Below are positions 7,705 to 60,577 of a DNA stretch of 64,000 bases, piece after piece (positions within the stretch are counted from its first letter, which is position 1; each line of letters opens with the position of its first letter). Under the pieces are notes generated by a model. That model was given only the letters and a program-made list of their open reading frames with translations. It did not search any database and was not told where the DNA came from. The position numbers and the translations under genes were made by a program. Location of the stretch: positions 62,001-126,000 of IMG/VR virus record IMGVR_UViG_3300027996_002186. One strand, 5' to 3'.

Positions 7705-8772
7705 ATGATTAAGAAGTTTAATCAATTTCTAGAAAATAAAAATTCTAGTTACCTTCTTTACTATGCGTTTGATTGGGATGATAATATATTAAATATGCCA
7801 ACCGTAATACACCTAGATAAAAAAGATGGTGACTCTTGGGTACCTATTAATGTTTCAACATCTGATTTCGCTGATGTCAGAAATGATGAGAATTATAGAA
7901 TGTTGAATAATGATCCTGATGAGGCTTTCTCTGAGTTTAGAGATGGCGGTCCTCGAGGGGTTGAAGCCTTTTTGATTGATACTAAAGCAGCTATTGCTAG
8001 TAACAGTTATGGTCCGGCTTGGGATGATTTTATTGAATGTTTGACAAATGGGTCAATATTTGCTATAATCACCGCTAGGGGTCACGAACCAGAGGCTATA
8101 AGATTAGGTATTGATTGGATACTTGATAATGTTCTAACCGAAGACGAAGTATATGATATGTATAATAACTTATTAAAGTTTGAGTATATGTTTGATAGAG
8201 TTGAAGGTGAGAAAATATTAAAAGGTGATCCATCTAAGAATGAATTGGTTAAGAAGTATTTAGATCAATGTGATTTAGTTGGTGTTTCGGCTCCTTCTAG
8301 AGGTGGTTCTCCTGAGAATCCGGAAAAGGAAAAGGAAAACGCTCTTATGGATTACAAGACTAAGATTAATGACTTTGCTAAAAACCTAGGTATGGAAGCA
8401 AAAGTTGGTTTTTCTGATGATGATTTAGGTAATGTTAAACATATTGAAGATTTAGTTGATAGTTTACATCACGAAAAATTCCCTAATATTGTTGAGTTTG
8501 TAGTTAAAAATACAAAAAACCCAGAAGATGTTACCAAAAAAGTTAGAACAATGAATCTAATAGAGGGTAATGATACCCCAGGTATGGAATCATCTGTTTT
8601 AGCATTCACTCAATTTAATAATATGACAAATAAACTGTATCCAACGGATGATAAAACAAGACAAGATGACTTTGCTAACCAATTCAGAAGACAATCTGAA
8701 TATCTAGCTAAAACTTCTAAAGACATCTTAGGGAAAAAGAAAGTAAAGAAGAAATTTCCTAAAAAGAAATAA
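7705..8772 (+). CDS. HAD-like hydrolase family protein
   Basis: FDWDDN (motif I), ITARG (motif II), FSDDD (motif IV); N-terminal tag MIKKFNQFLE. Confidence 0.55.
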   Translation: MIKKFNQFLENKNSSYLLYYAFDWDDNILNMPTVIHLDKKDGDSWVPINVSTSDFADVRNDENYRMLNNDPDEAFSEFRDGGPRGVEAFLIDTKAAIASNSYGPAWDDFIECLTNGSIFAIITARGHEPEAIRLGIDWILDNVLTEDEVYDMYNNLLKFEYMFDRVEGEKILKGDPSKNELVKKYLDQCDLVGVSAPSRGGSPENPEKEKENALMDYKTKINDFAKNLGMEAKVGFSDDDLGNVKHIEDLVDSLHHEKFPNIVEFVVKNTKNPEDVTKKVRTMNLIEGNDTPGMESSVLAFTQFNNMTNKLYPTDDKTRQDDFANQFRRQSEYLAKTSKDILGKKKVKKKFPKKK

Positions 8773-8788
8773 AAAATTAAAAGTCCTC

Positions 8789-9025
8789 TTAATGAGGATT
8801 TTTTTTATGCTTTATAATTTCATCTATTTTAATATCTCTTAATATAGCTTTTTGATTTTCATTAAACCAACGTTTATAATCGTGATTATAAGCCATATGA
8901 ACACCATCAATAATTGGACCAGCCTGTCCAAACATAAACTCAGTAAAGCTTTTACGCCAATCATCAGGTATATCATCGAATGATACGGGCTCTGTATTTA
9001 AATACATCTCCATTAATTTAATCAT
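8789..9025 (-). CDS. Hypothetical protein
   Basis: 78 aa with C-terminal RDIKIDEI motif; a host-type promoter lies upstream. Confidence 0.6.
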   Translation of the reverse strand: MIKLMEMYLNTEPVSFDDIPDDWRKSFTEFMFGQAGPIIDGVHMAYNHDYKRWFNENQKAILRDIKIDEIIKHKKNPH

Positions 9026-9029
9026 GTAA

Positions 9030-9061
9030 CAAATATAATAAACTTAACTCTATTTTCCTAA
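9030..9061 (-). promoter_or_regulatory. Bacteroidota-type sigma promoter (TTAG-N20-TATATTTG)
   Basis: Minus strand TTAG (9061-9058), 20-nt spacer, TATATTTG (9037-9030), just upstream of the ATG at 9025. Confidence 0.6.
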
Positions 9062-9072
9062 TATATCATGTA

Positions 9073-10269
9073 ATGGATAAGGGATATATAAAAAATATGA
9101 TACAGAAGATTCTTGATAAAGAGTTTTCTCATAAACAGAAGCGTCGTCTTAATGATTATCACGATAGACTTAACATGGCTTGTCCTTATTGTGGTGATAG
9201 TCACCGTCACAAACATTCTAAGAGAGGCAATCTCTATTTCAATAGATTATTCTATATTTGCTTCAACTGTGATAAGAAGACTACCTTAGACAAGATGTGT
9301 AGGGATTTCAATGAGCAAATTGATCCAGGTAAGAAATTAGAAATGATTGAGCACTTAGATAGTGTCATGACTTATAATGATTACGAAAATGAGTTTGTAG
9401 ATGCTCAATTTGATAATCTAATTGATATGGAAGATCTTGAAGCAGCTTTCGCTTCTGATATAACTCCCATAAATGACTTCCAACCTATTAAGGTTAATGG
9501 TGGTATTTATAAGTACCTTATTGGTAGAGGAATAGGTCCCGAATTACATAAAAATATTTATCAAGCAAAGTATCACAAAAACGAAAACGAAAGTGAGTGG
9601 ATAATAGCTATGTTAAATAGAAGAGGTGATAAGATAATTGGAATGCAAGTCAGAAACCTTAAAGGTGGTAGACGAAGAATGTTCAAGATATACAATTATG
9701 AGAATCTATTAGAGTGGGTTAATCATGGTAAAGAAGAGCCTCTTAATATAGATATGGGTGAGATGGTTATTTATAATAAATTATCATACTATTTTAATAT
9801 ATTGAATGTTAACTTCGAAAAAAGAATAACCGTATTTGAGGGTTATTTAGATTCTTTATTCTATCCAAATTCAATAGGTTTGGTTGGTGTAAATACTGAT
9901 TATAGATTTTTGGAGAATAATGGATTTGATATACAATATTTCTTTGATAATGATGAAGCTGGTTTTAATAAGTCAGAAGAAAAAATGAATGATGGGTTTT
10001 CTGTCTTCTTGTGGAGAAAATTATTAAACGATATAGTTGATAAAAAGAATTCGACAGATCCATATAAGCTATTCCATAGAATAGTTAAGGTCAAAGATAT
10101 AAATAAATTGGCTGAGTTAGTACCAAATCCCTATAAGGCTCTTAAATTACCTGATTATTTTAGCACAGATGTTCTTGATGTTAAATGGATACCTAAAATG
10201 AATAAAGGTAAGTGGGTAGAAAGAGAAACTGATTATAACAAGAAATTTGATAATTTTAATAGATTATGA
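9073..10269 (+). CDS. DNA primase (T4 gp61-like)
   Basis: Zn finger CPYCGDS...CFNC, TOPRIM motifs FEGYLDSLF and FFDNDEAG, and KDIN. Confidence 0.9.
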   Translation: MDKGYIKNMIQKILDKEFSHKQKRRLNDYHDRLNMACPYCGDSHRHKHSKRGNLYFNRLFYICFNCDKKTTLDKMCRDFNEQIDPGKKLEMIEHLDSVMTYNDYENEFVDAQFDNLIDMEDLEAAFASDITPINDFQPIKVNGGIYKYLIGRGIGPELHKNIYQAKYHKNENESEWIIAMLNRRGDKIIGMQVRNLKGGRRRMFKIYNYENLLEWVNHGKEEPLNIDMGEMVIYNKLSYYFNILNVNFEKRITVFEGYLDSLFYPNSIGLVGVNTDYRFLENNGFDIQYFFDNDEAGFNKSEEKMNDGFSVFLWRKLLNDIVDKKNSTDPYKLFHRIVKVKDINKLAELVPNPYKALKLPDYFSTDVLDVKWIPKMNKGKWVERETDYNKKFDNFNRL

Positions 10270-10314
10270 ATTGGCATGGTGTGTGTTAATACAGGTAGTT
10301 GAGTTATTTATATA

Positions 10315-11527: not shown

Positions 11528-12022
11528 TTACTTAAATTTTCTAGTATTCTTATAACTTTTAGATTCACCTACTTTCATAGCATATCTTTCATCCTCATCC
11601 ATTTCATCAAATTCTTTATCAGCTAATTTGTTTGATTCACCTTCTATAAAAGTAACAACTTCATCCGCCGTTTTGAATTTTTTATTACCAACGTGAAACA
11701 TCTCTGTTTCTGATGGGAAAATTATCTTTTGTCCATTATATTCTACTTTACCATTAGTAACCTCTGATCCTAATTTATCAGCAACTTCTTGTAGTTTATT
11801 TGCATAAACATCTCCACCTTCTTCTTCCATTTCTTCTTCCATTTCTTCAGATTCTAAATCTTCAATGGGAGCTTCTTTAACGTCAGATTCTAAATCTTTG
11901 AATTCATGTTCTAAGTCACGAATAGCTAATTCATGTTCTTGTTGGTTTGTATCAAACTCTTCTTCTGATTCAAACTCTTCGTTTACTCTTTCGTTAACAA
12001 ATTGATTATATTTTTTAATCAT
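11528..12022 (-). CDS. Acidic protein, putative internal head protein
   Basis: Likely start ATG 12022 (MIKKYNQFVNE tag); Glu-rich. Confidence 0.55.
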   Translation of the reverse strand: MIKKYNQFVNERVNEEFESEEEFDTNQQEHELAIRDLEHEFKDLESDVKEAPIEDLESEEMEEEMEEEGGDVYANKLQEVADKLGSEVTNGKVEYNGQKIIFPSETEMFHVGNKKFKTADEVVTFIEGESNKLADKEFDEMDEDERYAMKVGESKSYKNTRKFK

Positions 12023-12062: not shown

Positions 12063-12557
12063 TTAATTATCAGAATTTTTCAATTCACTTATAACATAAT
12101 CAACAAAACTATCTAACTCATATTCTAATCCATTACAAAATTCGAATATGTCATAATTATCTTGATTCTTTCTCTTTTTTATTGAGAAAAAATCAGGTGA
12201 TGTTGTTCCATTACTAAATAAAACTATTTTTCCCTCTAACCTACCTTCTATTTTCTTCTTACTAGGAAATTCTAAATCAGGAACATACATTGTCCCAATA
12301 TAGTGTATTTCATCACCATAATCTTCTATTTCTTCTAATTCAAATTTGAAATATCCATAATCATCTTCGAAAACTCTTTCACTTTCTTCTTTCACTATCT
12401 CCTTATGAACTTCTTCTTCACCACCAGAAGCGTGAGCGTCCAAAAAATCTTTCTCCAGCTTGGTTATAGAAGGCATACCATATTTAGATATTTTATCTAA
12501 AATATCATCTACCCTTTCTTTGGTAGTATAACCTTCATATCTCATTAAGTGTTTCAT
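12063..12557 (-). CDS. Hypothetical protein with DUF6576-like motif
   Basis: Likely start MKHLMRYE at 12557; contains VDDILDKISKYGMPSITKLEKDFL. Confidence 0.55.
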   Translation of the reverse strand: MKHLMRYEGYTTKERVDDILDKISKYGMPSITKLEKDFLDAHASGGEEEVHKEIVKEESERVFEDDYGYFKFELEEIEDYGDEIHYIGTMYVPDLEFPSKKKIEGRLEGKIVLFSNGTTSPDFFSIKKRKNQDNYDIFEFCNGLEYELDSFVDYVISELKNSDN

Positions 12558-12607
12558 ATTGTTATTAAACATTAAGGTATATATTTCATATTGAATTCCC
12601 TTTTTTA

Positions 12608-13217: not shown

Positions 13218-13249
13218 AAATTATATATCTATATTTAATATATACCCAT

Positions 13250-14008
13250 ATGCTAAATTATAAAGAGTATTTAAAGGAGGCCCAAGATAATCAAGTCGTT
13301 GTGTTGGATGATGGACAAGGTGGTAATATGTTTAAGACTGTTAAAAATGGTAGTAAGAACTCAATTACTTATCTTAATGCTGTTATAAAAAGGTTTATCG
13401 AAAGTGTTTATGGATCATCTGGGTTTGTTTATGGTAAACATACTGATATATTTATCGATAATAAGATAATTAATGGTGAGTATATATCAAAGATGGTTAA
13501 TAATTACACCATTTTTAAAAATGTGATAAGAATTAATAATATTAAAGAGGAAGAATCTTTTTATAATTTTATGTTATCTAATCTGAATAATATTTATTCA
13601 CCAAATGGTAAATTCTTTTTAGAACAATCATTACCTATTTTAATAAACACAACTAGAAGGGGAAATGTACTTGAAAAAATGGCTAAGGAATCCTTTTTAA
13701 AGTATTCTAAAGAAAAAGATATCGAGATTACTATACAAAACCCTTCTGTTGATGAAGATATAAACGGTGTTGATTTCAAATTCTTATCCAATGGTAGAAG
13801 TTTTACTGTTCAAGTAAAGCCATTTACTGATTATAAGTATATTGGTGATAAAATTTTCATAAAGACAGAAGGATCTTTATCATTGAATACAAACTACTTG
13901 ATACTATGTGATGGTAAGAATTGTATTAAATTAAGAAATACACCCTCTAATCCAGTTAAAATAAAAGGTAATACTTTTATTTCAAGTAAATCTAATCTAC
14001 TTATTTAA
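13250..14008 (+). CDS. Putative PD-(D/E)xK-fold nuclease-like protein
   Basis: G-x2-LE helix followed by DINGVDF...TVQVK; N-terminal tag MLNYKEYLKE. Confidence 0.45.
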   Translation: MLNYKEYLKEAQDNQVVVLDDGQGGNMFKTVKNGSKNSITYLNAVIKRFIESVYGSSGFVYGKHTDIFIDNKIINGEYISKMVNNYTIFKNVIRINNIKEEESFYNFMLSNLNNIYSPNGKFFLEQSLPILINTTRRGNVLEKMAKESFLKYSKEKDIEITIQNPSVDEDINGVDFKFLSNGRSFTVQVKPFTDYKYIGDKIFIKTEGSLSLNTNYLILCDGKNCIKLRNTPSNPVKIKGNTFISSKSNLLI

Positions 14009-16048: not shown

Positions 16049-16432
16049 ATGAGGTTAAAGAAGTTTAATAGTTTCAAAATTAATGAATCAGAAGAGTTGA
16101 TGGAAACTCCTGTTGAGACTGGTAGCAAAGCATCTACATTAACTGGTGAGGTTACTCTTTATAGACTCACTTCTCATCCGGTTGTTGATCTTTCTTCACC
16201 TGGTGAGTATTATGTATGTGATAAAGGTGATATCGACCCTTCTATATTAGATAAGAAAGAAAGTTCTGAGTTATATTTAATTACGGTTACTTGTGATTCT
16301 TCTAATATTGACTTAGATAAATCTGAAATGGAGATTGCTAACTTAGGAAACGATTCTATCGTAGCAGTTAAAGATGATAATGTTTGTAAGGTTATTAGTG
16401 TTACTCCTTATGGAAACAATCCAGTAGATTAA
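16049..16432 (+). CDS. Hypothetical protein, putative internal head protein
   Basis: MRLKKFNSFKINE tag; TAATATATA at 16021. Confidence 0.55.
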   Translation: MRLKKFNSFKINESEELMETPVETGSKASTLTGEVTLYRLTSHPVVDLSSPGEYYVCDKGDIDPSILDKKESSELYLITVTCDSSNIDLDKSEMEIANLGNDSIVAVKDDNVCKVISVTPYGNNPVD

Positions 16433-22351: not shown

Positions 22352-22421
22352 TTCGTAGAAATATTATTACTAAGTATATCATGTAAATCTTTTTTTGTTT
22401 AGTTATTTTAATATATATGTT

Positions 22422-22748
22422 ATGGTAAAAAAATGGAATCAATTTATTAGAGAATTCATAGAGAACTCGGATAATGTTATCGATATTAAAATGCAAGAGA
22501 TAAGAACACTTATAAATGGTGTTTCTGATGGCCAGAACATAGTATATGAATGGGAGAATAAAAATGATCATCAATTAATAGTTAATTTCACTAAAGATGA
22601 TTTATCTATTAGATATGAATTTGACATCGATAATTTGATAGTTAAAAAAATAGTTGGTGATACTGTTGATTTCACCAATCAGGCAAAATCCATAAGTGGT
22701 GGGTTAATTAATATTGAAAAGGATATACATATGGTTTTAAGTATTTAA
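22422..22748 (+). CDS. Hypothetical protein
   Basis: Likely start ATG 22422 (MVKKWNQFIRE) just after TAATATATA. Confidence 0.55.
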   Translation: MVKKWNQFIREFIENSDNVIDIKMQEIRTLINGVSDGQNIVYEWENKNDHQLIVNFTKDDLSIRYEFDIDNLIVKKIVGDTVDFTNQAKSISGGLINIEKDIHMVLSI

Positions 22749-24819: not shown

Positions 24820-24850
24820 AAAAACCCACTCAGATTTTGAGTGGTTTTTT
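24820..24850. terminator. Bidirectional terminator
   Basis: A5-CCCACTCA-gatt-TTGAGTGG-T6 between convergent genes. Confidence 0.75.
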
Positions 24851-25172
24851 ATGCTTTTTTATTTATTTTGTCATATAACTTTTTGAAATGATCTCTTATC
24901 ATTCTTTTAGTAACTTCTTCTAAAGATAAAATGTTATTAACTTCGTTAAGAAAATCTTCTAATCCTAAATCATCCATGAATTCTTTGGTGAATTCTTTGT
25001 TTAATTCTCTTAGTATTGTTCTTGAATCTATTTTCTTATCCATGTTCAAAAGTATAGAAGTTCTATATTCTTTTAATCTAAATAATAAATTATCATTTAT
25101 CTGTGATAATGTATTTTCATCCAAATCAGACATTTTTAATTCTTCGTTAAACTTTTTGAAATTATAAATCAT
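24849..25172 (-). CDS. Hypothetical protein
   Basis: Likely start MIYNFKKFNEE at 25172. Confidence 0.5.
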   Translation of the reverse strand: MIYNFKKFNEELKMSDLDENTLSQINDNLLFRLKEYRTSILLNMDKKIDSRTILRELNKEFTKEFMDDLGLEDFLNEVNNILSLEEVTKRMIRDHFKKLYDKINKKA

Positions 25173-25176
25173 ATTA

Positions 25177-26150: not shown

Positions 26151-26237
26151 TCACGACCACTTGTATTTTTTTAGTAGTATATCATAAACATCTGATTTTA
26201 TATCATTACTTTCGTTAAATTTTCTTAGATATTTCAT
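26151..26237 (-). pseudogene. Truncated tagged mini-ORF
   Basis: MKYLRKFNESNDIKSDVYDILLKKYKWS*, with an ATGA overlap to the upstream methyltransferase gene. Confidence 0.4.
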
Positions 26238-26806
26238 GTCTTAGCAACTATTTCTAACCATTTTGATTGATTATCATAAAGAATTCCTTCCTTTATCTCA
26301 GATGAAACTATCTCAAATTCATTTGATACTAAATCTTCCCAAGTTTCTTTATTAAATATTGTTTTACCTGTTTGTATATCATTTACTAACTTAACAGTAA
26401 ATACTAAATACTCTTTTGTGATTCTACTAATGTCTTTGAATATACTTTGTAATTCTGACTCACTGAAATAGTGAAGTCCTAATCTAGAATAAACTAAATC
26501 AAATGAATTATCAGGAAATGGGAATTTGTTTTTGGTGTCGTGTTTAACACAGTTAATCTTCTGATTAACGTGGTCTACATATTGTTGATTGTTTTCTGTT
26601 CCGAATACTACATATCCTCTTTTTAAGAGTTCTAAAGCATCAGCCCCGTTACCACAAGAAATTTCTAAGATAGAACCACTTGAAATAAGTGATTGTATTT
26701 TCTCTACTAACTCAATATCAGCATTGTCATCTAACTTTAGTAGAGTGTCTTGATTATTTAATTCTTCTTGATTCTCGAATATTTTTCTAGTGAGTAAGTG
26801 TTTCAT
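26234..26806 (-). CDS. Class I SAM-dependent methyltransferase
   Basis: ILEISCGNG, FPFPDNSFDLVYSRLGLHY. Confidence 0.85.
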   Translation of the reverse strand: MKHLLTRKIFENQEELNNQDTLLKLDDNADIELVEKIQSLISSGSILEISCGNGADALELLKRGYVVFGTENNQQYVDHVNQKINCVKHDTKNKFPFPDNSFDLVYSRLGLHYFSESELQSIFKDISRITKEYLVFTVKLVNDIQTGKTIFNKETWEDLVSNEFEIVSSEIKEGILYDNQSKWLEIVAKT

Positions 26807-27593: not shown

Positions 27594-27914
27594 ATGAATC
27601 ATATTAAAAAATACGAATCTTTCGATTTTAGTAATACTTTACCAATATCATCTAAATCAGACTTAACAATGTATTATAATTGCAATGTTTGTAATGCTCT
27701 TTGGGAATCATTTAATGATCCTTGTGTTAAGTGTAGATTTTGTGATACGGGTAACATTAAAGAATTGGATGAAGATGGTTACTATGATATGGTTGAGTCA
27801 AGGTTAGAGGATGATGAAGTAGAAGATTTGAGAAGTGAGAGGGAAGATAGTAAAGATAAATTTGTTAATTTATTATCATTAAAAGCAAAAGAGAAGAAAA
27901 AGTATGTCAATTAA
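27594..27914 (+). CDS. Zn-ribbon protein
   Basis: CNVC...CVKCRFC; likely start MNHIKKYESF at 27594. Confidence 0.55.
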   Translation: MNHIKKYESFDFSNTLPISSKSDLTMYYNCNVCNALWESFNDPCVKCRFCDTGNIKELDEDGYYDMVESRLEDDEVEDLRSEREDSKDKFVNLLSLKAKEKKKYVN

Positions 27915-37746: not shown

Positions 37747-37818
37747 AATACACAACCATCCATATAATTTATAAACAGAAAAGTCTAGCGTTCTGTTTTT
37801 ATATTTAATATATACTTT

Positions 37819-39264: not shown

Positions 39265-39911
39265 AACATCTAGAGAAATTTTATAACTATATTACGGAGT
39301 CTGATTCATATTCTAAAGATGAATTGAATGAATTGTTAGTACCTATTAGGGATTTGGGTGTGTCTTGTGATATTGGTGATAAAAGAACAATAACAGAGGG
39401 TAAATTTTATGGTAGTGAATACATTAGTGTTGGATTTTCATTTAATGACTATGAAAAAACACCTGGTTTTGGATACCGAACCGATATTATGTCTGATAAT
39501 AGAATATGGGATTTTTTCGATGAGTTAATTTCTTTGAGAAATAGGTTAGAGAATGATAAAATATTAATACATTTTTATAACACTAAGTATGGTAGTTATG
39601 GTGTTAGTATAATGTTTGTTACTGGTGAGGTAACTGATAATAAATTATTTGAACTAGAAAAGGTTTATAATGTATTAAGAACTAGATCTAATTCTGGTAC
39701 AACAGATTTTTATTATAGTATGTTACTGAAATTAAATAAAGAGGAACCCTCTATAAATATTGAGGTTTCTCAATATACTAGTAGGAAATTCAAATACTTT
39801 ACTAGACAAATTGATATGTCTGGTTTTGATATTAGAATTGTAATTATTGGAGCTGGTAGTTATGGTTATGGCGGTACAAAAGCAGATATTAAGATAACAC
39901 CTAAAGGTTAA
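39261..39911 (+). CDS. Hypothetical protein
   Basis: MKHLEKFYNYITE tag; ATGA overlap with the previous gene. Confidence 0.55.
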   Translation: MKHLEKFYNYITESDSYSKDELNELLVPIRDLGVSCDIGDKRTITEGKFYGSEYISVGFSFNDYEKTPGFGYRTDIMSDNRIWDFFDELISLRNRLENDKILIHFYNTKYGSYGVSIMFVTGEVTDNKLFELEKVYNVLRTRSNSGTTDFYYSMLLKLNKEEPSINIEVSQYTSRKFKYFTRQIDMSGFDIRIVIIGAGSYGYGGTKADIKITPKG

Positions 39912-41215: not shown

Positions 41216-41262
41216 ATAAAAACATTTCTTTTTTAATTATATGAATATTTAATATATAGTTT

Positions 41263-41421
41263 ATGAAATATATTAAGACTTTTGAATCTTTCTATATTGG
41301 ATGTTGGATGATATTGGACGGTCACCATAGGTTATTGAAAGATATTAATAATGGTATTGTTAATATAAAGGATAGAATTTTGGACTTAAAAAGTTTTTTA
41401 TCAAAAAATGATTTTTGGTAA
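41263..41421 (+). pseudogene. Tagged mini-ORF containing a ParB/Srx-like motif
   Basis: MKYIKTFESF...WMILDGHHRLLK..., 52 aa; TAATATATA at 41250. Confidence 0.45.
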
Positions 41422-47518: not shown

Positions 47519-48079
47519 CTATTTTTGCTCTTGAGATGAGAGATTTTTTACATGATCCCTCATATCTTGCTCCATTTTAACCATTTTTTCTTTGTGGTCT
47601 TTTTCTTTTCCTACTAAATCTTGTTGTATTTCACTTATTTTGCTGGATCTTTCGGACATTCTATTTTTAATATCACTTATTTTGAATTCAACAGCTTTTT
47701 TTGTTTCACTATCCTCTGATAAACCAAGAGATTGTTGTAAATCATCTAATTTTATTTTATCATTTGAATTATCATCTTGTGATTTATTTATATCCTTTTC
47801 TAACTTAGCTAAGTGTGCATATTCTACTAGAAAGGGATTTCTATCCTTTCCGCTCTGAACATCTGTCTCACCTAGTATCTTTTCTAGCTCTGGTTTGATA
47901 TCAGCGCCTTCTTTAGAATATAATGCATCGATTTGTGATTTCTTAGTCTTATAGTCTTTCATATTAGACATAATAGTATTCATCTTCTCTTTAGACATAA
48001 CAACGTCTGGAGTATCAGTATCTCCTATCTCAAATTCATCAGCTTCTAGAAATAATTTATACTTTTTTAGATATTTCAT
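47519..48079 (-). CDS. Coiled-coil protein, putative internal head protein
   Basis: MKYLKKYKLFLE tag. Confidence 0.55.
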   Translation of the reverse strand: MKYLKKYKLFLEADEFEIGDTDTPDVVMSKEKMNTIMSNMKDYKTKKSQIDALYSKEGADIKPELEKILGETDVQSGKDRNPFLVEYAHLAKLEKDINKSQDDNSNDKIKLDDLQQSLGLSEDSETKKAVEFKISDIKNRMSERSSKISEIQQDLVGKEKDHKEKMVKMEQDMRDHVKNLSSQEQK

Positions 48080-50922
48080 TTTTCTAAATAACCTTTTGCT
48101 TTATCAACTGATATATCACCATAAGCATTTTGTGTTGCTGATGTTGGTAGTAAGTATTGTTCACCGGAACCTTCACCTTCTTTTACATAAAATGTGTATA
48201 AATCTTCTATCTTGCCTAAGTCAACTTCTTCTGTTTTCAGTTCTGAGGAACGTTCTTTAAGAGTAGTTAAATTAATAGATTTCAATTTTAAATTGATACC
48301 TTCTTTTAAGAGACCACCTTTAGCATCGAATAATTTATTAGATATTCTAGCATAATGTATAGTAGAGTCATTATCATTTAATGATGATGATAAGTCACCT
48401 TTCATACCCTTAACATTTTCACCTTTAATATATTTACTGATGTATCCAAATGTTTTTGAATATTTCAAATAAGTAAAATCACTATCACCTGCTATTACTA
48501 TCATAAAATATGAATTATTTAGGTTAAAAATACAACCAGGTTTATCATTTACCTCTTTAGACTTTTTGAACTCAGCTATTATATTACCTTTTGTTTCATC
48601 AGCAACTTCAGCATTTCCTTCAACCTCTTTTCCACCCGTATAATCTAATTTATTTGAATCAACATCAACTTTGAAGTATTTGCTGATAAATTTATGTTGT
48701 GCGCCACCACCTTTTCCACCCGAGGACCTGTATAAAGTATCTCCGTCTAACATATCGTTCATAAATTTGAGTAGTACTTTACCACCACCTTCTACTCTAC
48801 CACTTTTCTTACCTTTATCACTAATTGATGTTGGTGAAACATTTACCCTATCATCTGCTTTACCAACTTGTATAATAGTCGATTCATCGAATAAAACTGT
48901 ATATTTTGAATCCTTTATTATATCAAGAACAGCATCTTCCCATTTGGTGAATATTCTTATGTTTCTATAAGGGCCCATTCCAACTTTAAATCCACTTGAT
49001 TCAGTATTAACCTCAGGAGATCCACTACCTATATACTCATACTCTCTGAATTTTTTATTAGATACTTTACCACCACTTCTACCCGTTGGTATTGTCTGTG
49101 ATGTGTGTAATTTATAAGCTCTGTTAAATATCTTAACAATTTCTAGTATAGGATCAATACCGTTTATTTTATATGTAGTACCCTCTTTCTCCATTTTTAC
49201 CAACCTCTGTTCCAGATTTTTAGCATCTTGTTCGGTAACAGACCATTTTCTCAAATATTCTTCACTGAAAAATTTATTCCATGGTATGGATAAATCATAT
49301 CTATTCTCTTTTTCGATAGATTGATCCTCTTTTGAAACATCTCCAGATGGTTTATCTTTTGTTGTATCATCAACCACATCTTCACCTTCCGCTTCAAATA
49401 TTTTTCTGAAACTTTTATATCTTAATAACTTACCTTCGTTTTTCTCTACCTTATCCTCTGGTTTTTCATTTTCTGTAACCTCTGGCTCCTGTTCTAAAAT
49501 AGCACTCATTGTTTCATTAAATGATTTTATTGAATTTTTCAATGCACCATCTATATCTTTCCCCCATTCATCAATTTCGGTTAAATCTCCTGATTTTGAA
49601 ACACTATATAAATTTTTAATATGATTACCAAGTGCCTCACTACCGGATAATAAACTATCTAAATTTTCTGATACTGATGTTTTCTTAATATGATCATATA
49701 GGTTTTTAACAGAAGCATATTTTTGCATCATTTCCGCGTTACCAGCTGATAATTTATTTTTATTGTCATCAGACATTTTATCATAACTTGATATCAATCC
49801 TTGTAATTCTACTAGATTATTAGGATCTTCATTCATAAAATTAAATAATGCCTTTGTAGCATTTAGAATAGGTATATTATCTTGCTTTTTATCATCAGTT
49901 CCCTCATTTAGTGAGAATTTTCTAAAACTATCGTTCATAGACTCGGCATATAATTCGGTATCTGGTACTTTATTCCATGTTTCAGCTTTAGCAACAGATT
50001 TTAGAAAACTTTCTCCTTCTTTGGATTTTTTGAAATCCTCCATAGTACCAGAATTTCCTTTTTCTGACCAAATTTTGTAAGCAACTTCCTGTTTAAATTT
50101 CTTTCTAGTATGTTCTCCTGGTTTAAGATTAGCTCCCTTACCAAGAGCTTTTTGACTTTTTAGCAACTCAGCTAGTTTTTTCTGATAAAGATCTTCACCT
50201 TTAACTCCCCATTCAAAATGAACCTGTTCGGGTTCTTCAACTTCTTTTGGAGCTGGTAATGACCTTACTGATTTAATCTTCTTAAAAGACTCTAATATAC
50301 TAGATATGGATTTTATATTTGCCATATAAAGTTGATAAGGTATTTTTTCACCATCAGTTTCCTCACCATCAGTTTCCTCATCATCAGTTTCCTCATCATC
50401 AGTTTCCTCATCATCAGTTTCCTCCATTTCTTTAAGTTCTGCTAAAAATTCAGTTAACTTTTCTAAAACTTCTTGTCTATCACCTTCACTTTCATCAGAG
50501 TATAATACCACTTCTGTTATTGCATAAATAGTTTCAGTTGTAACTCTTATTATTTCATCTAAATGATTTTTACCTTCCGCTTCAGGTTCTTTTATTGCTT
50601 TTATTAATTTCCCTATTAAAATAGAAATAGACAACATATCAATTTCTTTATTTGTTGCTTCATCAATCTCAGCTCCGTTTAATTTAGCAGTATCTACTAA
50701 ATAATCAAATTGTGTTTTTAGTCTTTTAATAACAGAGTCTATTCTAACTAAATCTATTCCTATTTGAGCCTTTCTAGCAAATGAGTGTAACATTCTTCCT
50801 AATAATGAGTCTCCCCATGCTATATCATTGGCGAATGGTCCTGCTCCTGAAACAACAGCTTCGTTAACGACTTTATATTTTGCTGACTTTAAGTATTCAG
50901 TTCTACTTGATAGATACTTCAT
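48076..50922 (-). CDS. Large putative internal virion protein
   Basis: 948 aa; N-terminal MKYLSSRTEYL...VNE and internal tag-like segments (FRKFSLNE, LLRYKSFRKIFE). Confidence 0.5.
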   Translation of the reverse strand: MKYLSSRTEYLKSAKYKVVNEAVVSGAGPFANDIAWGDSLLGRMLHSFARKAQIGIDLVRIDSVIKRLKTQFDYLVDTAKLNGAEIDEATNKEIDMLSISILIGKLIKAIKEPEAEGKNHLDEIIRVTTETIYAITEVVLYSDESEGDRQEVLEKLTEFLAELKEMEETDDEETDDEETDDEETDGEETDGEKIPYQLYMANIKSISSILESFKKIKSVRSLPAPKEVEEPEQVHFEWGVKGEDLYQKKLAELLKSQKALGKGANLKPGEHTRKKFKQEVAYKIWSEKGNSGTMEDFKKSKEGESFLKSVAKAETWNKVPDTELYAESMNDSFRKFSLNEGTDDKKQDNIPILNATKALFNFMNEDPNNLVELQGLISSYDKMSDDNKNKLSAGNAEMMQKYASVKNLYDHIKKTSVSENLDSLLSGSEALGNHIKNLYSVSKSGDLTEIDEWGKDIDGALKNSIKSFNETMSAILEQEPEVTENEKPEDKVEKNEGKLLRYKSFRKIFEAEGEDVVDDTTKDKPSGDVSKEDQSIEKENRYDLSIPWNKFFSEEYLRKWSVTEQDAKNLEQRLVKMEKEGTTYKINGIDPILEIVKIFNRAYKLHTSQTIPTGRSGGKVSNKKFREYEYIGSGSPEVNTESSGFKVGMGPYRNIRIFTKWEDAVLDIIKDSKYTVLFDESTIIQVGKADDRVNVSPTSISDKGKKSGRVEGGGKVLLKFMNDMLDGDTLYRSSGGKGGGAQHKFISKYFKVDVDSNKLDYTGGKEVEGNAEVADETKGNIIAEFKKSKEVNDKPGCIFNLNNSYFMIVIAGDSDFTYLKYSKTFGYISKYIKGENVKGMKGDLSSSLNDNDSTIHYARISNKLFDAKGGLLKEGINLKLKSINLTTLKERSSELKTEEVDLGKIEDLYTFYVKEGEGSGEQYLLPTSATQNAYGDISVDKAKGYLEK
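50348..50422. repeat. 15-bp tandem repeat x5 (encodes ETD[D/G]E)
   Basis: tca(c/t)catcagtttcc repeated five times. Confidence 0.9.
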
Positions 50923-57254: not shown

Positions 57255-57257
57255 ATA

Positions 57258-57289: not shown

Positions 57290-57343
57290 TAATACAAGGA
57301 GATAATTTGTTAATTTATATATACACCAAAATAAAAAAGTTTT

Positions 57344-58257: not shown

Positions 58258-58319
58258 TTAAGTTGTAAAAAACGGCTTTTAATACTTAATATATAACTTA
58301 TAAAAAAATTCTATTAAAT

Positions 58320-58913
58320 ATGAAGCATATTAGAACGTATGAAAAATATCGTATTGTAAAGAACAGATCTGAAATTATCAAAGAAGCTGTTCTACAAGTT
58401 AATGATATTTATAAAGTAAAGACAATGATTGATATTCCTCAATCTTTGATTAACTCTTATGTTAAGAAAGTTAAAGAAACTACTGGTAAGAACCTAAGAC
58501 AATTTTTTGGTGATGTTGACATCGCTGAGGAAATTGTTAAATATATTAATATGAACAATCTTGATATAGAGAAGATTCCAGGTGGAGCTTTGATGGGTGG
58601 TCAAGAAGAAACACAAGTTCAGCAAGCTCAACCAGAAGCACAACCACAAGCTCAAATGCAACCTCAGGTTCAACCAGAAGCACAACAAACACAACCACAA
58701 GGTGAGTTTGAAGAGCCACAAGCAGATGCTCAAGTACAGGCTCAAGATGGTCAAGTACAAGTTCAAGCAGATGGTCAAACACAAGTACAAGATGGTCAAG
58801 TACAGGCTCAAGATGGTCAAGTACAGGCTCAAGATGGTCAAACACAAGGTCAAGTACAAGGTCAAGCACAAGACGAAGATGAAGAAGAGGACGAAGAAGA
58901 ACTTCCACTTTAA
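58320..58913 (+). CDS. Protein with a Gln-rich repeat tail, putative head/internal protein
   Basis: MKHIRTYEKY tag, QVQAQDG repeats, acidic end. Confidence 0.55.
   Translation: MKHIRTYEKYRIVKNRSEIIKEAVLQVNDIYKVKTMIDIPQSLINSYVKKVKETTGKNLRQFFGDVDIAEEIVKYINMNNLDIEKIPGGALMGGQEETQVQQAQPEAQPQAQMQPQVQPEAQQTQPQGEFEEPQADAQVQAQDGQVQVQADGQTQVQDGQVQAQDGQVQAQDGQTQGQVQGQAQDEDEEEDEEELPL
58725..58870 (+). repeat. Imperfect 21-bp tandem repeats (QVQAQDG)
   Basis: caagtacaggctcaagatggt occurs three times, with degenerate copies between. Confidence 0.8.
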
Positions 58914-58936
58914 TTTATAGAAAATATTAAAAAATG

Positions 58937-58968
58937 AAACCCATCAAATAAACTTTGATGGGTTTTTT
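58937..58968 (+). terminator. Rho-independent terminator
   Basis: AAACCCATCAAA-taaac-TTTGATGGG-T6. Confidence 0.8.
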
Positions 58969-58986
58969 ATTTAATATATACTTACA

Positions 58987-59601
58987 ATGAGATACCTAAA
59001 GGCATATGAGAATTATAATACTGATACAACACTTATAATTGTTGATGTTCAAAAATCATTTAAGAAATTCTTTTCTGAGATGTACATAAATAAATTAAAA
59101 AAGTATTGTAATGAATTTGTCAATGTTTATCAAATCTGGGATAACCATACAGATGGTAAAATTGTTGATAAAGACTACTTATATGATAAAAATCCTGAAA
59201 TTCCAATACATGATGATTTATACCATTTTCCTAACCAAAGTGAGTTAATCGAAAAGAGATATAATTATGATGTAGATGCTGATTTTTATAAAAAAATTCT
59301 AGATAAGGAAGTTTATAAAGAGATTAGTGATAAAGAGGATAATAAACAATTAAAAAAAGGTGACTTTTTCCGAACAAAAGAGGGAACTATTATAGTTTAT
59401 ATTGGTAATAATCATAAATGGTTCCAAGTTCCTATTAAATTATATAAACATCTTGTTGAATTAAGGGGTAAGAGTGTTATTATTGTTGGTGGTTCTGATT
59501 CTGAATGTTTGGAGGATATTATTACATCTGCTGAAAGTCTTGGTGTTAATATTAAAAGAGATTATAAGTATATCTACTCAGCAAATCATTGTCCTATCTA
59601 A
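58987..59601 (+). CDS. Isochorismatase/nicotinamidase-fold cysteine hydrolase
   Basis: TLIIVDVQ (catalytic Asp), WDNH, IIVGGSDSECL (catalytic Cys position); tag MRYLKAYENY. Confidence 0.65.
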   Translation: MRYLKAYENYNTDTTLIIVDVQKSFKKFFSEMYINKLKKYCNEFVNVYQIWDNHTDGKIVDKDYLYDKNPEIPIHDDLYHFPNQSELIEKRYNYDVDADFYKKILDKEVYKEISDKEDNKQLKKGDFFRTKEGTIIVYIGNNHKWFQVPIKLYKHLVELRGKSVIIVGGSDSECLEDIITSAESLGVNIKRDYKYIYSANHCPI

Positions 59602-59975
59602 ATTACTGAAGCATAAACCTCATAGTCTTTGAGATTGAATGTTATAACCATATACTCTTGGTGTCTATCTGGATCTTCGAAAAACTCAACTGTTAGCCCA
59701 TAGTCTATACCATCTATTTCCTCTATATAATCTGATATTTGTGCTCTAATATCTCCTTCGATAGCTTCTGCTGATAATCTTGTTTCATATAATAGAGCTG
59801 GTAAATCTGCTCCGAAGTTTGGATCACCTAATAAATCACCTTTATTAGTGAAAATGACCATTTCGTATTTTTGTACGATCACCCTAATCACATCATCCTC
59901 AATCATTTCTTTATCGGTGAATCTTGGGTGACCAGGGTAACCTATGTAGAAGTCTATAAAATTAATATCTGCCAT
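59598..59975 (-). CDS. Baseplate wedge protein (gp25-like)
   Basis: IFTNKGDLLGDPNFGADLPALLYE. Confidence 0.75.
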   Translation of the reverse strand: MADINFIDFYIGYPGHPRFTDKEMIEDDVIRVIVQKYEMVIFTNKGDLLGDPNFGADLPALLYETRLSAEAIEGDIRAQISDYIEEIDGIDYGLTVEFFEDPDRHQEYMVITFNLKDYEVYASVI

Positions 59976-60007
59976 GTGTTTATATATTAATTTTTATATA
60001 TACTCAT

Positions 60008-60577
60008 ATGAAATATCTGAAATTTTTTGAATCTTATAGAGGAACTGTATCTGTTAATAGAGATATTTTTATAAAGGTTTTATCTGATTATAGTAGTATA
60101 TATGATGATGGTTTGGTTACACAATTAGAGGAATTGGGATTTGAGAGTAGTGATGTAATTGCTGATATGATAGAAGATTCATTGAATAATGGTGATCGTA
60201 TAAGTTTAGAGGCTATAACACTTTTAGTTGATGAGATATCAAGAGGTAATTCTGAGAGGAGCGCAAGTAAGTTACAGGATATTTATAATGAATGTGAATA
60301 TCATTTAAATAATAGTACTGTTGATGTTATTGATAACTTGAAAGATATATTCTCTGAATATGTTGATGATAATAAAGCAATGATATATAAAACTGGTGAT
60401 AAATCTGACAACCGATGTGTCGTTTTACTAAAACAGGTTGATGTTTTGTTAAATATCGATTTCGATGAAGTATTAAATAGGGTTAAAGAATTTGTAAACT
60501 TAAAACATATGGAATATGTTGGTAGTAAAGACCGAATTAAATTTGAGTTTTATGAAAGATATCCTGATGAAGATTAG
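60008..60577 (+). CDS. Hypothetical protein
   Basis: MKYLKFFESY tag. Confidence 0.55.
   Translation: MKYLKFFESYRGTVSVNRDIFIKVLSDYSSIYDDGLVTQLEELGFESSDVIADMIEDSLNNGDRISLEAITLLVDEISRGNSERSASKLQDIYNECEYHLNNSTVDVIDNLKDIFSEYVDDNKAMIYKTGDKSDNRCVVLLKQVDVLLNIDFDEVLNRVKEFVNLKHMEYVGSKDRIKFEFYERYPDED

What the first reader, a model, noticed from the sequence alone, without database searches (positions are those of the whole stretch)
7705..60577. Shared capsid-targeting-like N-terminal tag on about 18 unrelated proteins
Seen: unrelated ORFs begin with a similar basic/aromatic motif usually ending in Glu: MIKKFNQFLE (7705), MIKKYNQFVNE (12022), MKHLMRYE (12557), MLNYKEYLKE (13250), MRLKKFNSFKINE (16049), MVKKWNQFIRE (22422), MIYNFKKFNEE (25172), MKYLRKFNE (26237), MKHLLTRKIFE (26806), MNHIKKYESF (27594), MKLTKYLEF (37819), MKHLEKFYNYITE (39261), MKYIKTFESF (41263), MKYLKKYKLFLE (48079), MKYLSSRTEYL (50922), MKHIRTYEKY (58320), MRYLKAYENY (58987), MKYLKFFESY (60008). 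Core replication, tail and fibre genes lack it, and most tagged genes follow the late motif. Established: T4 internal proteins carry a ~10-aa capsid-targeting sequence (MKTYQEFIAE-like) that the prohead protease removes after Glu. Inference: a large, modular packaging address for proteins injected with the DNA.
Basis: partly seen in the sequence, partly recalled or inferred. Interest (0 to 1): 0.7.

Follow-up and report, generated by a model that had tools for sequence, protein, structure and literature searches.

The report
Capsid-targeting-like tag on 88 phage proteins
About a quarter of the proteins of this uncultured marine jumbo phage start with the same ~10-residue peptide. The peptide matches the address phage T4 uses to load internal proteins into its head, which suggests (without proof) that the phage packages and injects an unusually large protein cargo.

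Summary
The window lies in a 241,918-bp, 30% GC marine viral contig. I count 88 of 374 predicted proteins with the N-terminal tag, in two forms: long (MKYLK[KT][FY][EN]..) and short (M[IL]KK[FYW]NxF..E). A profile trained only on tags outside the window finds 15 of 74 window N-termini. It finds none of 313 internal-Met windows and none of 664 other ATG windows. Synonymous codon use inside tags equals that of gene bodies, so selection acts on the peptide. Orthologues in a 635-kb relative keep the tag, and it is better conserved there (77%) than the protein bodies (65%). The phage has a T4-type portal, a T4-type capsid protein, and a gp21-type protease fused to a repeat scaffold. It also has a gp55-like late sigma factor, and the same TAATATATA motif precedes tagged and structural genes. 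In a blind scan of all 1,580 open ATG windows of T4, the tag profile ranks ipI, ipII and ipIII in the top four. The best reading is an expanded T4-like capsid-targeting propeptide, with confidence about 0.55. Packaging and cleavage are untested. "Unrelated" is only partly right, because at least 16 tagged proteins form one divergent family.

The parts
7705..7737 (+). Short-form tag MIKKFNQFLEN of a 355-aa protein (ORF 7705-8772)
   Evidence: 14.3 bits on the profile trained outside the window. The orthologue in LR745206.1 starts MIKKFNQFLENNN. No Pfam hit.
11990..12022 (-). Short-form tag MIKKYNQFVNE of a 164-aa acidic protein (ORF 11528-12022)
   Evidence: 16.7 bits. Orthologue starts MIKKYNQFVND. 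Promoter-like motif lies 26 nt upstream.
12525..12557 (-). Long-form tag MKHLMRYEGYT of a 164-aa protein with a DUF6576 segment (ORF 12063-12557; the longest ORF starts at 12572)
   Evidence: 9.1 bits. PF20216 matches residues 12-43. The orthologue starts with the identical MKHLMRYEGY.
13250..13282 (+). Variant tag MLNYKEYLKEA of a 252-aa protein (ORF 13250-14008)
   Evidence: Below 4 bits on the cross-validated tag profile. Scores 4.8 bits on the scaffold-repeat profile. The orthologue starts MKKFTEYIKESS, which is tagged. Motif lies 5 nt upstream.
16049..16087 (+). Short-form tag MRLKKFNSFKINE of a 127-aa protein
   Evidence: 11.7 bits. Orthologue starts MRLKRFNKFKINES. Motif lies 19 nt upstream.
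22422..22454 (+). Short-form tag MVKKWNQFIRE of a 108-aa protein
   Evidence: 10.4 bits. Trp sits at the aromatic position. Orthologue starts MIKKWNQFIRE. Motif lies 4 nt upstream.
25140..25172 (-). Doubtful tag MIYNFKKFNEE (internal ATG of ORF 24849-25208)
   Evidence: Below 4 bits. No clear tagged orthologue. No promoter-like motif.
26151..26237 (-). Tagged 28-codon ORF MKYLRKFNES..., probably a truncated gene remnant
   Evidence: 17.8 bits. The ORF is only 28 aa long.
26774..26806 (-). Weak long-form tag MKHLLTRKIFE of a 190-aa SAM-dependent methyltransferase (ORF 26234-26806)
   Evidence: 6.1 bits. PF13649 and PF08241 match residues 46-132. Orthologue starts MKYILSKKIFEN. Motif lies 5 nt upstream.
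27594..27626 (+). Long-form tag MNHIKKYESFD of a 106-aa Cys-rich protein
   Evidence: 21.8 bits. Orthologue starts MEHIKKFETFD. Motif lies 5 nt upstream.
37819..37851 (+). Weak tag MKLTKYLEFVQ of a 248-aa protein
   Evidence: 6.9 bits. Orthologue starts MKLNKFYEFVQ. Motif lies 4 nt upstream.
39261..39299 (+). Long-form tag MKHLEKFYNYITE of a 216-aa protein that also carries the second motif
   Evidence: 11.1 bits. Second motif is at residue 21. Orthologue starts MKHLTQFFDYIKE.
41263..41295 (+). Long-form tag MKYIKTFESFY of a 52-aa ORF
   Evidence: 19.7 bits. Motif lies 4 nt upstream.
48044..48079 (-). Long-form tag MKYLKKYKLFLE of a 186-aa protein (ORF 47519-48079)
   Evidence: 20.5 bits. Orthologue starts MKYLKKYKIFLE.
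50890..50922 (-). Not supported as a tag: MKYLSSRTEYL of the 948-aa protein (ORF 48076-50922)
   Evidence: Below 4 bits. Only MKYL is shared. No family hit.
58320..58352 (+). Long-form tag MKHIRTYEKYR of a 197-aa protein
   Evidence: 16.5 bits. Orthologue starts MKHIRTYENYR.
58987..59019 (+). Long-form tag MRYLKAYENYN of a 204-aa protein
   Evidence: 14.0 bits. Orthologue starts MKYIRTYESYS: half the residues differ but the pattern is kept.
60008..60040 (+). Long-form tag MKYLKFFESYR of a 189-aa protein
   Evidence: 11.4 bits. Motif lies 5 nt upstream. A related strain has a 9-nt KYL duplication here.

Best explanation
The tag is this lineage's version of the T4 capsid-targeting sequence. It is a short, flexible N-terminal propeptide with the core [ML]-K-x-[FYW]-polar-polar-[FY], usually followed within a few residues by Glu.

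Proposed mechanism:
1. Tagged genes are transcribed late, from the same TAATATATA-type promoters as head and tail genes, through a gp55-like sigma factor.
2. The tag docks the new protein onto the prohead core, which is built from the protease-scaffold fusion protein.
3. The gp21-type protease degrades the scaffold at its [IL]-A-E sites, which recur every 14 residues, and clips the tag after its Glu.
4. The mature proteins stay in the head and enter the next host with the DNA.

What is shown:
- the tag exists and is restricted to N-termini;
- selection acts on the peptide, not the nucleotide sequence;
- orthologues retain the tag;
- the tag resembles the CTS of T4 ipI, ipII and ipIII;
- the T4-type head and late-transcription genes are present.

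What is inferred: docking to the core, cleavage, packaging and injection.
For: Enrichment and position.
- 15 of 74 window N-termini match, against 0 of 313 and 0 of 664 controls, with a profile trained outside the window.
- 71 N-terminal matches against 2 internal matches in the proteome.

Selection on the peptide.
- Synonymous codon use in tags equals that of gene bodies: Lys AAA 0.68 vs 0.72, Phe TTT 0.75 vs 0.70, Glu GAA 0.73 vs 0.74.
- Trp substitutes at the aromatic position.

Conservation in LR745206.1.
- 44 of 52 orthologues of tagged genes are tagged, against 2 of 156 orthologues of untagged genes.
- Identity is 77% in the tag against 65% in the body.

Separable module.
- NUDIX orthologues carry interchanging tag forms, and one homologue starts directly at the enzyme core.
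- In the AF2 model the tag has pLDDT 36 and is unstructured, while the core is above 90.

Blind T4 test.
- Among 1,580 open ATG windows of T4, the top four hits are gp61.1, ipI, ipIII and ipII.
- The T4 CTS sequence comes from PMC8442874.

T4-type machinery.
- Portal PF07230 and capsid protein PF07068.
- The protease domain hits only T4 gene 21, at E 3.6e-11, with the GExxHP and VSSR motifs aligned.
- The scaffold half has 10-11 repeats of NIAYSEYIAENLDK, each with an [IL]-A-E site of the T4 gp21 type.
- Gp55-like late sigma factor.

Late-type promoter motif.
- Upstream of 57 of 88 tagged genes, and also of the capsid protein, portal, sheath and terminase genes.
- Absent from the early-like gene array, which uses a different leader.

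Glu and cleavage context.
- Glu at residue 8-13 in 83 of 88 tagged proteins.
- Hydrophobic-x-Glu in 63 of 88 tagged against 59 of 286 untagged.

Distribution.
- Replication, tail, terminase and shell proteins lack the tag.
- Two tagged genes flank the peptidase gene next to the capsid gene.
Against: - No virion proteome exists and no cleavage data exist; the phage is uncultured.
- A quarter of all genes being packaged has no precedent. T4 has a handful of CTS proteins, and the giant Salmonella phage SPN3US has about 50 head proteins with longer propeptides (PMC5694885).
- P3 is Leu/Ile in only 35 of 88 tags. In the commonest form (..K-T-F-E-S) P3 is Thr or Lys.
- Tagged protein bodies are acidic (net -0.056 per residue), unlike the basic T4 internal proteins.
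- One tagged protein is a lysozyme with a membrane-spanning segment, next to a two-TM protein, which looks like a lysis cassette. However, an ejection protein with a TM segment after its propeptide is reported for SPN3US gp47.
- The top T4 hit, gp61.1, is not a known head protein.
- The scaffold-repeat profile matches only 3 of 88 tags at >=4 bits, so scaffold mimicry is not general.
- The complex prediction gave no answer.
- The motif TAATATATA also precedes the helicase gene, so it may not be strictly late.
Confidence: 0.55

Rival explanations
1. The tag is a peptide-level signal for something other than the capsid. One option is a degradation tag read by a Clp unfoldase, feeding the phage-encoded ClpP so that about 90 accessory proteins are short-lived. 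Others are a handle for a chaperone, a hub protein or a subcellular site.
For: - The phage encodes a genuine ClpP (PF00574, E 1e-64) at window 6605-7270, next to a tagged gene.
- The tag is N-terminal, flexible and peptide-selected, as any such signal would be.
- Met-basic-hydrophobic-hydrophobic N-termini resemble one class of ClpX recognition signals. This is recalled from the literature and was not tested here.
- The number of tagged proteins and their acidic, enzyme-rich make-up fit a cytoplasmic role at least as well as packaging.
Against: - No Clp unfoldase is encoded on the contig.
- This reading does not explain why the profile singles out T4's internal proteins.
- It does not explain why a Glu follows the tag in 94% of cases.
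- It does not explain why tagged genes share the promoter motif of structural genes.
Confidence: 0.2
2. The shared start is an RNA- or DNA-level element. It could be a translation-initiation region for leaderless or near-leaderless mRNAs in a host without Shine-Dalgarno pairing. Or it could be a recombination junction that shuffles promoter-plus-start cassettes. On this reading the peptide is a by-product.
For: - The promoter-like motif ends only 3-6 nt before the ATG in 36 of 88 tagged genes, against 21 of 286 untagged genes at 4-8 nt.
- No SD-like sequences are seen.
- Tags are A+T-richer (80%) than gene bodies (69%).
- In other IMG/VR contigs, arrays of tagged genes have a conserved junction AAATAAATTTAACATATGA.
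Against: - Synonymous sites in tags vary as freely as in gene bodies. Leu uses TTA, CTA, CTT and CTG, and Lys uses AAA and AAG.
- Replacements are conservative at the amino-acid level (F/Y/W; L/I/V/M; K/R).
- 31 tagged genes have no motif and sit inside operons.
- 21 untagged genes, structural ones among them, have the same short spacing.
- Highly expressed structural genes lack the tag.
Confidence: 0.1
3. The tag is inherited. The tagged proteins are one huge, fast-diverging paralogue family, plus fusions to it, whose N-terminal helix is simply the best-conserved part. It has no addressing role.
For: - 13-16 tagged proteins share a second motif (consensus LKDTIEDILLELEDDGYSVSVYF) 18-44 residues after the tag, and all hits are tagged.
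- BLAST finds small clusters and tandem arrays.
- The ESM Atlas lists 100 virus-only clusters around one member.
Against: - The tag also sits directly on unrelated, well-known folds: NUDIX, HD, SAM methyltransferase, GNAT, lysozyme, DHH, NFACT-R.
- It is unstructured and outside the fold in the NUDIX model.
- A NUDIX homologue exists without it.
- It is more conserved than the protein bodies.
Confidence: 0.1

Closest known systems
T4 capsid-targeting sequence (CTS) of internal proteins IPI, IPII, IPIII (Mullaney and Black 1996, as cited in PMC8442874 and PMC5694885)
   Same: - About 10 residues at the extreme N-terminus, with a similar pattern. T4 has MKTYQEFIAE and MKTFKEFTS...; this phage has MKSYTEFLLE, MIKKYNQFVNE and (MKY)LKTFESF.
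- The tag profile ranks T4's three internal proteins in the top four of 1,580 T4 candidates.
- A Glu follows the motif.
- It is carried by otherwise dissimilar, fast-evolving accessory proteins.
- It co-occurs with a gp21-type protease, a scaffold core, gp20- and gp23-type head proteins and a gp55-type late sigma factor.
   Different: - 88 proteins (24% of genes) here and 150 in a 635-kb relative, against a handful in T4.
- A dominant long form carries three extra residues (MKY/MKH).
- P3 is often not Leu/Ile.
- The cargo is acidic and includes enzymes.
- Protease and scaffold are one polypeptide.
- Packaging and cleavage are not demonstrated.
N-terminal propeptides of ejection and inner-body proteins of phiKZ-like giant phages such as SPN3US (PMC5694885, PMC10052503)
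   Same: - Giant phages with a gp21-related protease that cuts after Glu.
- Many different proteins are packaged in the head.
- The propeptides are proposed to target proteins to the prohead.
   Different: - Those propeptides are mostly 80-130 residues long and have no single shared short motif.
- About 50 head proteins in total, with processing documented for only a subset (19 in phiKZ, from memory).
- They belong to a different phage lineage.
Encapsulin cargo-loading peptides
   Same: A short, transferable terminal peptide addresses diverse enzymes to the inside of an HK97-fold shell.
   Different: - They are C-terminal in most systems.
- They bind the shell protein directly.
- They are not cleaved and have no scaffold or protease.
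- This is an analogy only and was not tested here.
ClpX N-terminal recognition signals
   Same: A short N-terminal Met-basic-hydrophobic pattern, with a ClpP gene present in the phage.
   Different: - The resemblance is recalled from memory and was not tested.
- No unfoldase gene was found.
- It does not explain the match to T4 internal proteins.

Membership tests
T4-type capsid-targeting sequence (CTS) | Short (about 10-20 aa) peptide at the extreme N-terminus of the precursor | tested here: met
   71 N-terminal matches at >=8 bits against 2 internal matches in the proteome. The tag spans residues 1-10 to 1-13.
T4-type capsid-targeting sequence (CTS) | Sequence resembles the CTS of T4 internal proteins | tested here: met
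   A profile trained only on this phage ranks ipI, ipIII and ipII at positions 2-4 of 1,580 open ATG windows in T4 (9.1-9.8 bits). The chance of two independent sequences both falling in the top four is about 5e-6.
T4-type capsid-targeting sequence (CTS) | Ends in a gp21 cleavage site, (L/I)-x-E in T4 | tested here: inconclusive
   Glu lies at residue 8-13 in 83 of 88 tags. Hydrophobic-x-E occurs in 63 of 88. Strict [LI]-x-E occurs in only 35 of 88, and P3 is often Phe or Thr. The specificity of this phage's protease is unknown. Its scaffold repeats carry [IL]-A-E.
T4-type capsid-targeting sequence (CTS) | Phage has a gp21-type prohead protease and a scaffolding core | tested here: met
   The protease domain profile hits only T4 gene 21 (E 3.6e-11), with the GExxHP and VSSR motifs aligned. 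It also matches phrog_207 at 1.6e-30. The C-terminal half is a repeat, coiled-coil-like scaffold.
T4-type capsid-targeting sequence (CTS) | Carrier genes are expressed late, together with head genes | tested here: inconclusive
   The same TAATATATA-type motif precedes tagged and structural genes, and a gp55-like sigma factor is present. The metatranscriptome contigs gave no timing and no 5' ends.
T4-type capsid-targeting sequence (CTS) | Carrier proteins are found in virions, processed after the tag | not testable with these tools
   The phage is uncultured and no proteome is available.
T4-type capsid-targeting sequence (CTS) | The tag is sufficient to load a foreign protein into the head | not testable with these tools
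   This needs an experiment. The complex prediction with the protease-scaffold protein gave no answer.
Single paralogous protein family | Detectable homology between members beyond the shared N-terminus | tested here: not met
   75 of 88 bodies are BLASTP singletons and at least 9 different Pfam folds occur. A sub-family of 13-16 members does exist.

The most novel reading that the evidence does not exclude
Marine huge phages related to the 635-735-kb 'clades of huge phages' genomes use one universal, cleavable N-terminal address. With it they load on the order of 90-150 different proteins into the prohead: enzymes, small effectors and a large orphan family. The phage would then deliver a ready-made proteome, not only DNA, into the next cell. 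The tag would be a sequence-only marker that predicts the injected protein set of uncultured phages.
Probability: 0.4. Interest if true: 0.9.

Novelty: new variant of a known kind. Interest (0 to 1): 0.75.

Why it matters
If the tag is a working capsid address, three things follow.

1. Scale of protein injection. It would show a scale of protein co-injection unknown in any phage. That would help explain what the hundreds of orphan genes in huge phages are for.
2. Effector prediction. It would give a simple sequence rule for listing candidate injected effectors, such as anti-defence and host-takeover proteins, in thousands of uncultured marine phage genomes. The protease-scaffold gene alone has 1,630 homologues in public data, and the contig is found in seawater metagenomes from 2012 to 2020.
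3. Packaging tool. It would offer a natural, short, transferable packaging tag beyond T4.

Even if the function is different, this is a peptide signal shared by a quarter of a proteome. It is more conserved than the proteins that carry it. I found no description of it in the searchable literature.

Tried and rejected
- SD-based start prediction. It mis-called starts because the genome has no Shine-Dalgarno sites. I replaced it with first-ATG calls, then corrected starts where a tag-scoring Met lay within 25 codons.
- Regex definitions of the tag. They gave false positives, so I replaced them with HMMs and cross-validation.
- Nucleotide search of the phage collection. It found only a 78%-identical piece of LR745206.1.
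- Literature searches for the peptides themselves and for conserved N-terminal motifs in huge phages. Nothing was found.
- Complex prediction of a 68-aa tagged protein with the protease-scaffold protein. The result was 'no answer', which is not evidence either way.
- Metatranscriptome contigs. They are fragmentary and come from 90-95% related strains, so they gave no 5' ends and no timing.
- Scaffold mimicry as a general mechanism. The scaffold-repeat profile matches only 3 of 88 tags at >=4 bits, against 10 of 2,625 internal windows. I kept it as a lead for the YxEY[IL]xE subset and for the T4 CTS only.
- PDB sequence search with the protease-scaffold protein. It returned only a designed coiled coil matching the repeats.
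- Searching five tag-rich IMG/VR contigs for the Gp23 family. No matches, but these are fragments of 6-46% completeness. Both near-complete contigs tested and one 78%-complete contig do have it.
- PTm1, the nearest cultured relative with annotation. It has no tags in a whole-record pattern scan or in its head region, so it cannot supply proteomic evidence.

Full report
**What the window is.** The 64-kb window is bases 124,448-188,447 of a single 241,918-bp viral contig. IMG/VR classes it as linear, and CheckV estimates 89% completeness. G+C is 29.9%. There are no Shine-Dalgarno-like sites. Some proteins have Bacteroidota-style signal peptides. The sequence occurs at about 100% of sampled words in many marine and seawater metagenomes from 2012-2020. 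An identical protease-scaffold protein lies on a 551-kb contig, so the true genome may be larger than this contig.

The nearest relatives by capsid protein are the uncultured huge phages LR745206.1 (635 kb, 78% identity), LR756502.1 (642 kb, 73%), LR756504.1 (636 kb, 53%) and LR756501.1 (735 kb, 52%). More distant are the Lak phages and Tenacibaculum phage PTm1.

**Checking the observation.** All 18 peptides are encoded at the stated coordinates. My own gene call, first ATG and greedy by length, gives 372 genes covering 92% of the contig. Two genes were added later.

The N-terminal motif is genome-wide. I built an iterated HMM and curated the short variants. The result is 88 tagged genes of 374:
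- 62 carry the long form MK[YH][LI]K[KT][FY][EN]..
- About 26 carry a short form such as MIKKFNQF..E.

Nearly all apparent control hits in a first pass were true starts that my caller had over-extended.

For a clean test I trained a profile only on the 71 tags outside the window. In the window it scores 15 of 74 N-termini at >=6 bits. It scores 0 of 313 internal-Met windows and 0 of 664 other open ATG windows (p 5e-12 and 3e-16). Over the whole proteome there are 71 N-terminal matches at >=8 bits and 2 internal ones. One of those two sits at an apparent gene fusion.

- 15 pass the cross-validated profile.
- 13250 fails, but its orthologue in the 635-kb relative has a proper tag.
- 25172 is doubtful.
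- 50922, the 948-aa protein, is not supported.
- 26237 opens a 28-codon remnant.

**Is it the peptide or the nucleic acid?** Codons at the conserved positions vary freely. Leu uses TTA, CTA, CTT and CTG. Lys uses AAA and AAG. Tyr/His positions use TAT, TAC, CAT and CAC. Synonymous usage inside tags is the same as in gene bodies for Lys, Phe, Tyr, Glu, Asn, Ile and His. Substitutions are conservative at the protein level, including Trp at the aromatic position. So selection acts on the peptide. This argues against a translation-initiation or recombination element, although tags are more A+T-rich than gene bodies (80% against 69%).

**Are the carriers unrelated?** With the first 15 residues removed, 75 of 88 are BLASTP singletons. 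Pfam finds a phage lysozyme, NUDIX, HD_4, GNAT, a SAM methyltransferase (window 26234-26806), NFACT-R_1, DHH, a winged helix and DUF326, each in a single member.

However, 13-16 proteins share a second motif (consensus LKDTIEDILLELEDDGYSVSVYF) 18-44 residues after the tag, and every hit is tagged. By eye the family has about 25 members. One member sits among 100 virus-only clusters in the ESM Atlas. So 'unrelated' is partly right. The tag sits on many different folds and also on one large divergent family.

**The tag is a separable, conserved module.** NUDIX orthologues from related contigs keep a 10-12-residue tag that changes between forms (MKFVKTFESF, MRFLRTYKLFES, MK-IKSWKIFNE). Meanwhile the enzyme core starts at an invariant LRYxGPNPT. 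One 53%-identical homologue starts directly at the core. In the AlphaFold model of this protein the tag (residues 1-11) has a mean pLDDT of 36 and no secondary structure. The core is above 90.

I assembled the complete 634,780-bp record LR745206.1 from fetched pieces. It has 150 tagged genes of 953 at >=8 bits, against 3 of 2,851 internal-Met windows. Of the 88 tagged genes here, 52 have a reciprocal best hit there. Of those, 44 are tagged at >=8 bits, and most of the remaining eight visibly keep a weaker tag. Only 2 of 156 untagged genes have a tagged orthologue. Identity is 77% over tag residues 1-10, against 65% beyond residue 40.

A back-translated pattern finds 17 sites here, 17 in LR745206.1, 6 in LR756504.1, none in PTm1 and none with the reversed pattern. 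It also finds at least 118 stretches in IMG/VR. In the flanks of those stretches, 394 of 1,604 ORFs are tagged, often in long arrays. Both near-complete tag-rich contigs tested (483 and 676 kb) encode a Gp23-type capsid protein, as does a 78%-complete one.

**The machinery around it is T4-like.**
- The portal matches PF07230 and the capsid protein matches PF07068.
- A 713-aa protein upstream of the capsid gene matches phrog_207, head maturation protease.
- A small profile of its N-terminal domain hits exactly one T4 ORF, gene 21, at E 3.6e-11. The GExxHP and VSSR segments are aligned.
- Its C-terminal half has 10-11 tandem 14-residue repeats (consensus NIAYSEYIAENLDK). Each contains [IL]-A-E, the type of site at which T4 gp21 cuts. 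That T4 gp21 cuts at (L/I)-x-E is established knowledge of T4, not something tested here.
- This protein is therefore a gp21-gp22 fusion, as also annotated for PTm1.
- The window also holds a tail sheath, a tail tube, a large terminase, a gp15-like sheath stabiliser and a clamp-loader ATPase.
- A gp55-like late sigma factor lies just past the window end.

**Expression class.** The motif [TA][TA]ATATATA lies within 60 nt upstream of 57 of 88 tagged genes and 59 of 286 untagged genes. Only 2% of random 60-nt windows contain it. In the window it is only 1.7 times more frequent than in dinucleotide shuffles. What is non-random is its position, directly upstream of genes in the sense orientation.

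The same motif precedes the capsid, portal, sheath, terminase and several large structural genes. Its spacing to the ATG is bimodal. It is 3-6 nt in 36 tagged genes and 4-8 nt in 21 untagged genes, which would give leaderless or near-leaderless mRNAs if the geometry is like that of T4 late promoters. Otherwise it is 17-27 nt.

A block of small genes at the left end of the contig uses a different, highly conserved leader, TTAAACCAAAACAAAG-ATG. None of the 88 tagged genes has it. So tagged genes group with structural genes rather than with the early-like array. The motif also precedes the helicase gene, however, and metatranscriptome contigs gave no timing. 'Late' is therefore an inference.

**The link to the T4 CTS.** The T4 CTS is MKTYQEFIAE (PMC8442874). 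In T4, internal proteins associate with the prohead core through it, and gp21 then removes it (PMC5694885).

The published 10-mer scores 10-12.5 bits on profiles trained only on this phage. It aligns to the short form. One tag here, MKSYTEFLLE, shares six of its ten residues.

As a blind test I scanned every ATG followed by at least 40 open codons in T4, 1,580 windows in all. The four best hits are gp61.1 (MKTFKEFIKED), ipI (MKTFKEFTST..), ipIII and ipII. Their identities were confirmed from the T4 annotation. The chance that two independent sequences both land in the top four is about 5e-6.

The T4 CTS segment YQEFIAE is also the best match in the T4 proteome to this phage's scaffold repeat YSEYIAE. 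But only three tags of this phage match that repeat at >=4 bits. Scaffold mimicry therefore remains a lead, not a finding.

Glu lies at residue 8-13 in 83 of 88 tags. A hydrophobic-x-Glu context occurs in 63 of 88. Strict [LI]-x-E occurs in 35 of 88. Ser is the commonest residue after the Glu.

**Best explanation and its limits.** The evidence fits an expanded T4-like capsid-targeting propeptide. The steps would be late expression, docking on the protease-scaffold core, removal after Glu, retention in the head, and injection. None of the physical steps is shown.

Points against:
- The sheer number of carriers.
- Their acidity.
- The inconsistent P3 residue.
- A tagged lysozyme with a membrane-spanning segment, next to a two-TM protein. 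A TM segment after the propeptide is, however, reported for SPN3US ejection protein gp47.
- The top T4 hit is not a known head protein.

The complex prediction gave no answer.

A phage ClpP at window 6605-7270, with no unfoldase on the contig, keeps a degradation-tag reading alive. I put the CTS reading at about 0.55, another peptide signal at 0.2, an RNA or DNA element at 0.1, and pure common ancestry at 0.1.

**Novelty.** The kind is known (the T4 CTS). The scale, the long form, the cargo and the lineage are not. I found no description of these peptides or of a shared N-terminal motif in huge phages in the searchable literature. That library lacks most subscription journals, so this is not proof of novelty.

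Noticed in passing
G000:C1:1-6200 (outside the window; locus L001): About 20 small minus-strand genes are each preceded by the nearly invariant leader TTAAACCAAAACAAAG directly before the ATG. None of the 88 tagged genes has it. This looks like a separate, early-like gene class with its own translation-initiation region.
   Followed up: partly
window 6605-7270 (-): A genuine ClpP protease gene (PF00574, E 1e-64). No Clp-type unfoldase was found on the contig.
   Followed up: partly
window 19184-21166 (-): A phage-encoded TonB-dependent receptor (Plug plus beta-barrel) with a signal peptide. Next to it, at 17650-18669, is a NadR-like protein (nucleotidyltransferase plus AAA_28).
   Followed up: no
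G000:C1:198213-200354 (L008:12213-14354): The prohead protease is fused to a scaffold with 10-11 tandem 14-residue repeats NIAYSEYIAENLDK, each with an [IL]-A-E site. An acidic low-complexity stretch follows. The T4 CTS segment YQEFIAE is the best match in the T4 proteome to this repeat.
   Followed up: partly
genome-wide, e.g. window 13236-13249, 22409-22421, 37806-37818, 41250-41262: The promoter-like motif TAATATATA ends only 4-6 nt before the ATG of 57 genes. That implies leaderless or near-leaderless mRNAs if the start-site geometry is like that of T4 late promoters. A second class has a spacing of 17-27 nt.
   Followed up: partly
window 64163 onward (L008:2610-2975), just past the window end: A gp55-like late sigma factor (phrog_234, E 1.9e-7). 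A gp15-like sheath stabiliser lies at window 61596-62639 and a clamp-loader ATPase at 60574-61533.
   Followed up: partly
G000:C1:22142-22870 (L002:4142-4867): One ORF carries two in-frame tags: MKYLRTFEGH at residue 1 and MKYLRTFNES at residue 101. The second is followed by the second motif. This is either a fusion of two tagged genes or a lost stop codon.
   Followed up: no
window 60008: A metatranscriptome contig from a related strain has a 9-nt insertion that duplicates KYL in the tag (MKYLKYLKFF..). Another gene in this genome starts MKYLMKYLKTYES. Tags seem prone to three-codon slippage.
   Followed up: no
IMG/VR loci L022, L031, L039, L040, L045: In other very A+T-rich viral contigs, up to nine consecutive tagged genes overlap by ATGA. 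They share the junction AAATAAATTTAACATATGA, so each protein ends in ..NKFNI and the next starts MKYIK. Both gene ends are conserved at the DNA level, as in cassette arrays.
   Followed up: no
T4 NC_000866 18966-19130 (-), gene 61.1: T4 hypothetical protein gp61.1 (54 aa) starts MKTFKEFIKED and is the top T4 hit of the tag profile, above the three internal proteins.
   Followed up: no
G000:C1:65519-67376 (L004): A possible lysis cassette of four genes: a tagged 136-aa protein, a tagged lysozyme with a TM segment after the tag, an untagged two-TM protein, and a tagged 98-aa protein.
   Followed up: partly
window 26151-26237 (-): A 28-codon tagged ORF overlaps the stop codon of the methyltransferase gene and precedes a gene with its own promoter-like motif. 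It is probably a decayed tagged gene.
   Followed up: no
protein P0028: A protein identical to the protease-scaffold is recorded on a 551-kb contig, and 1,630 homologues exist in public data. The 242-kb contig may be a fragment of a much larger and very common marine phage, despite the 89% completeness estimate.
   Followed up: no
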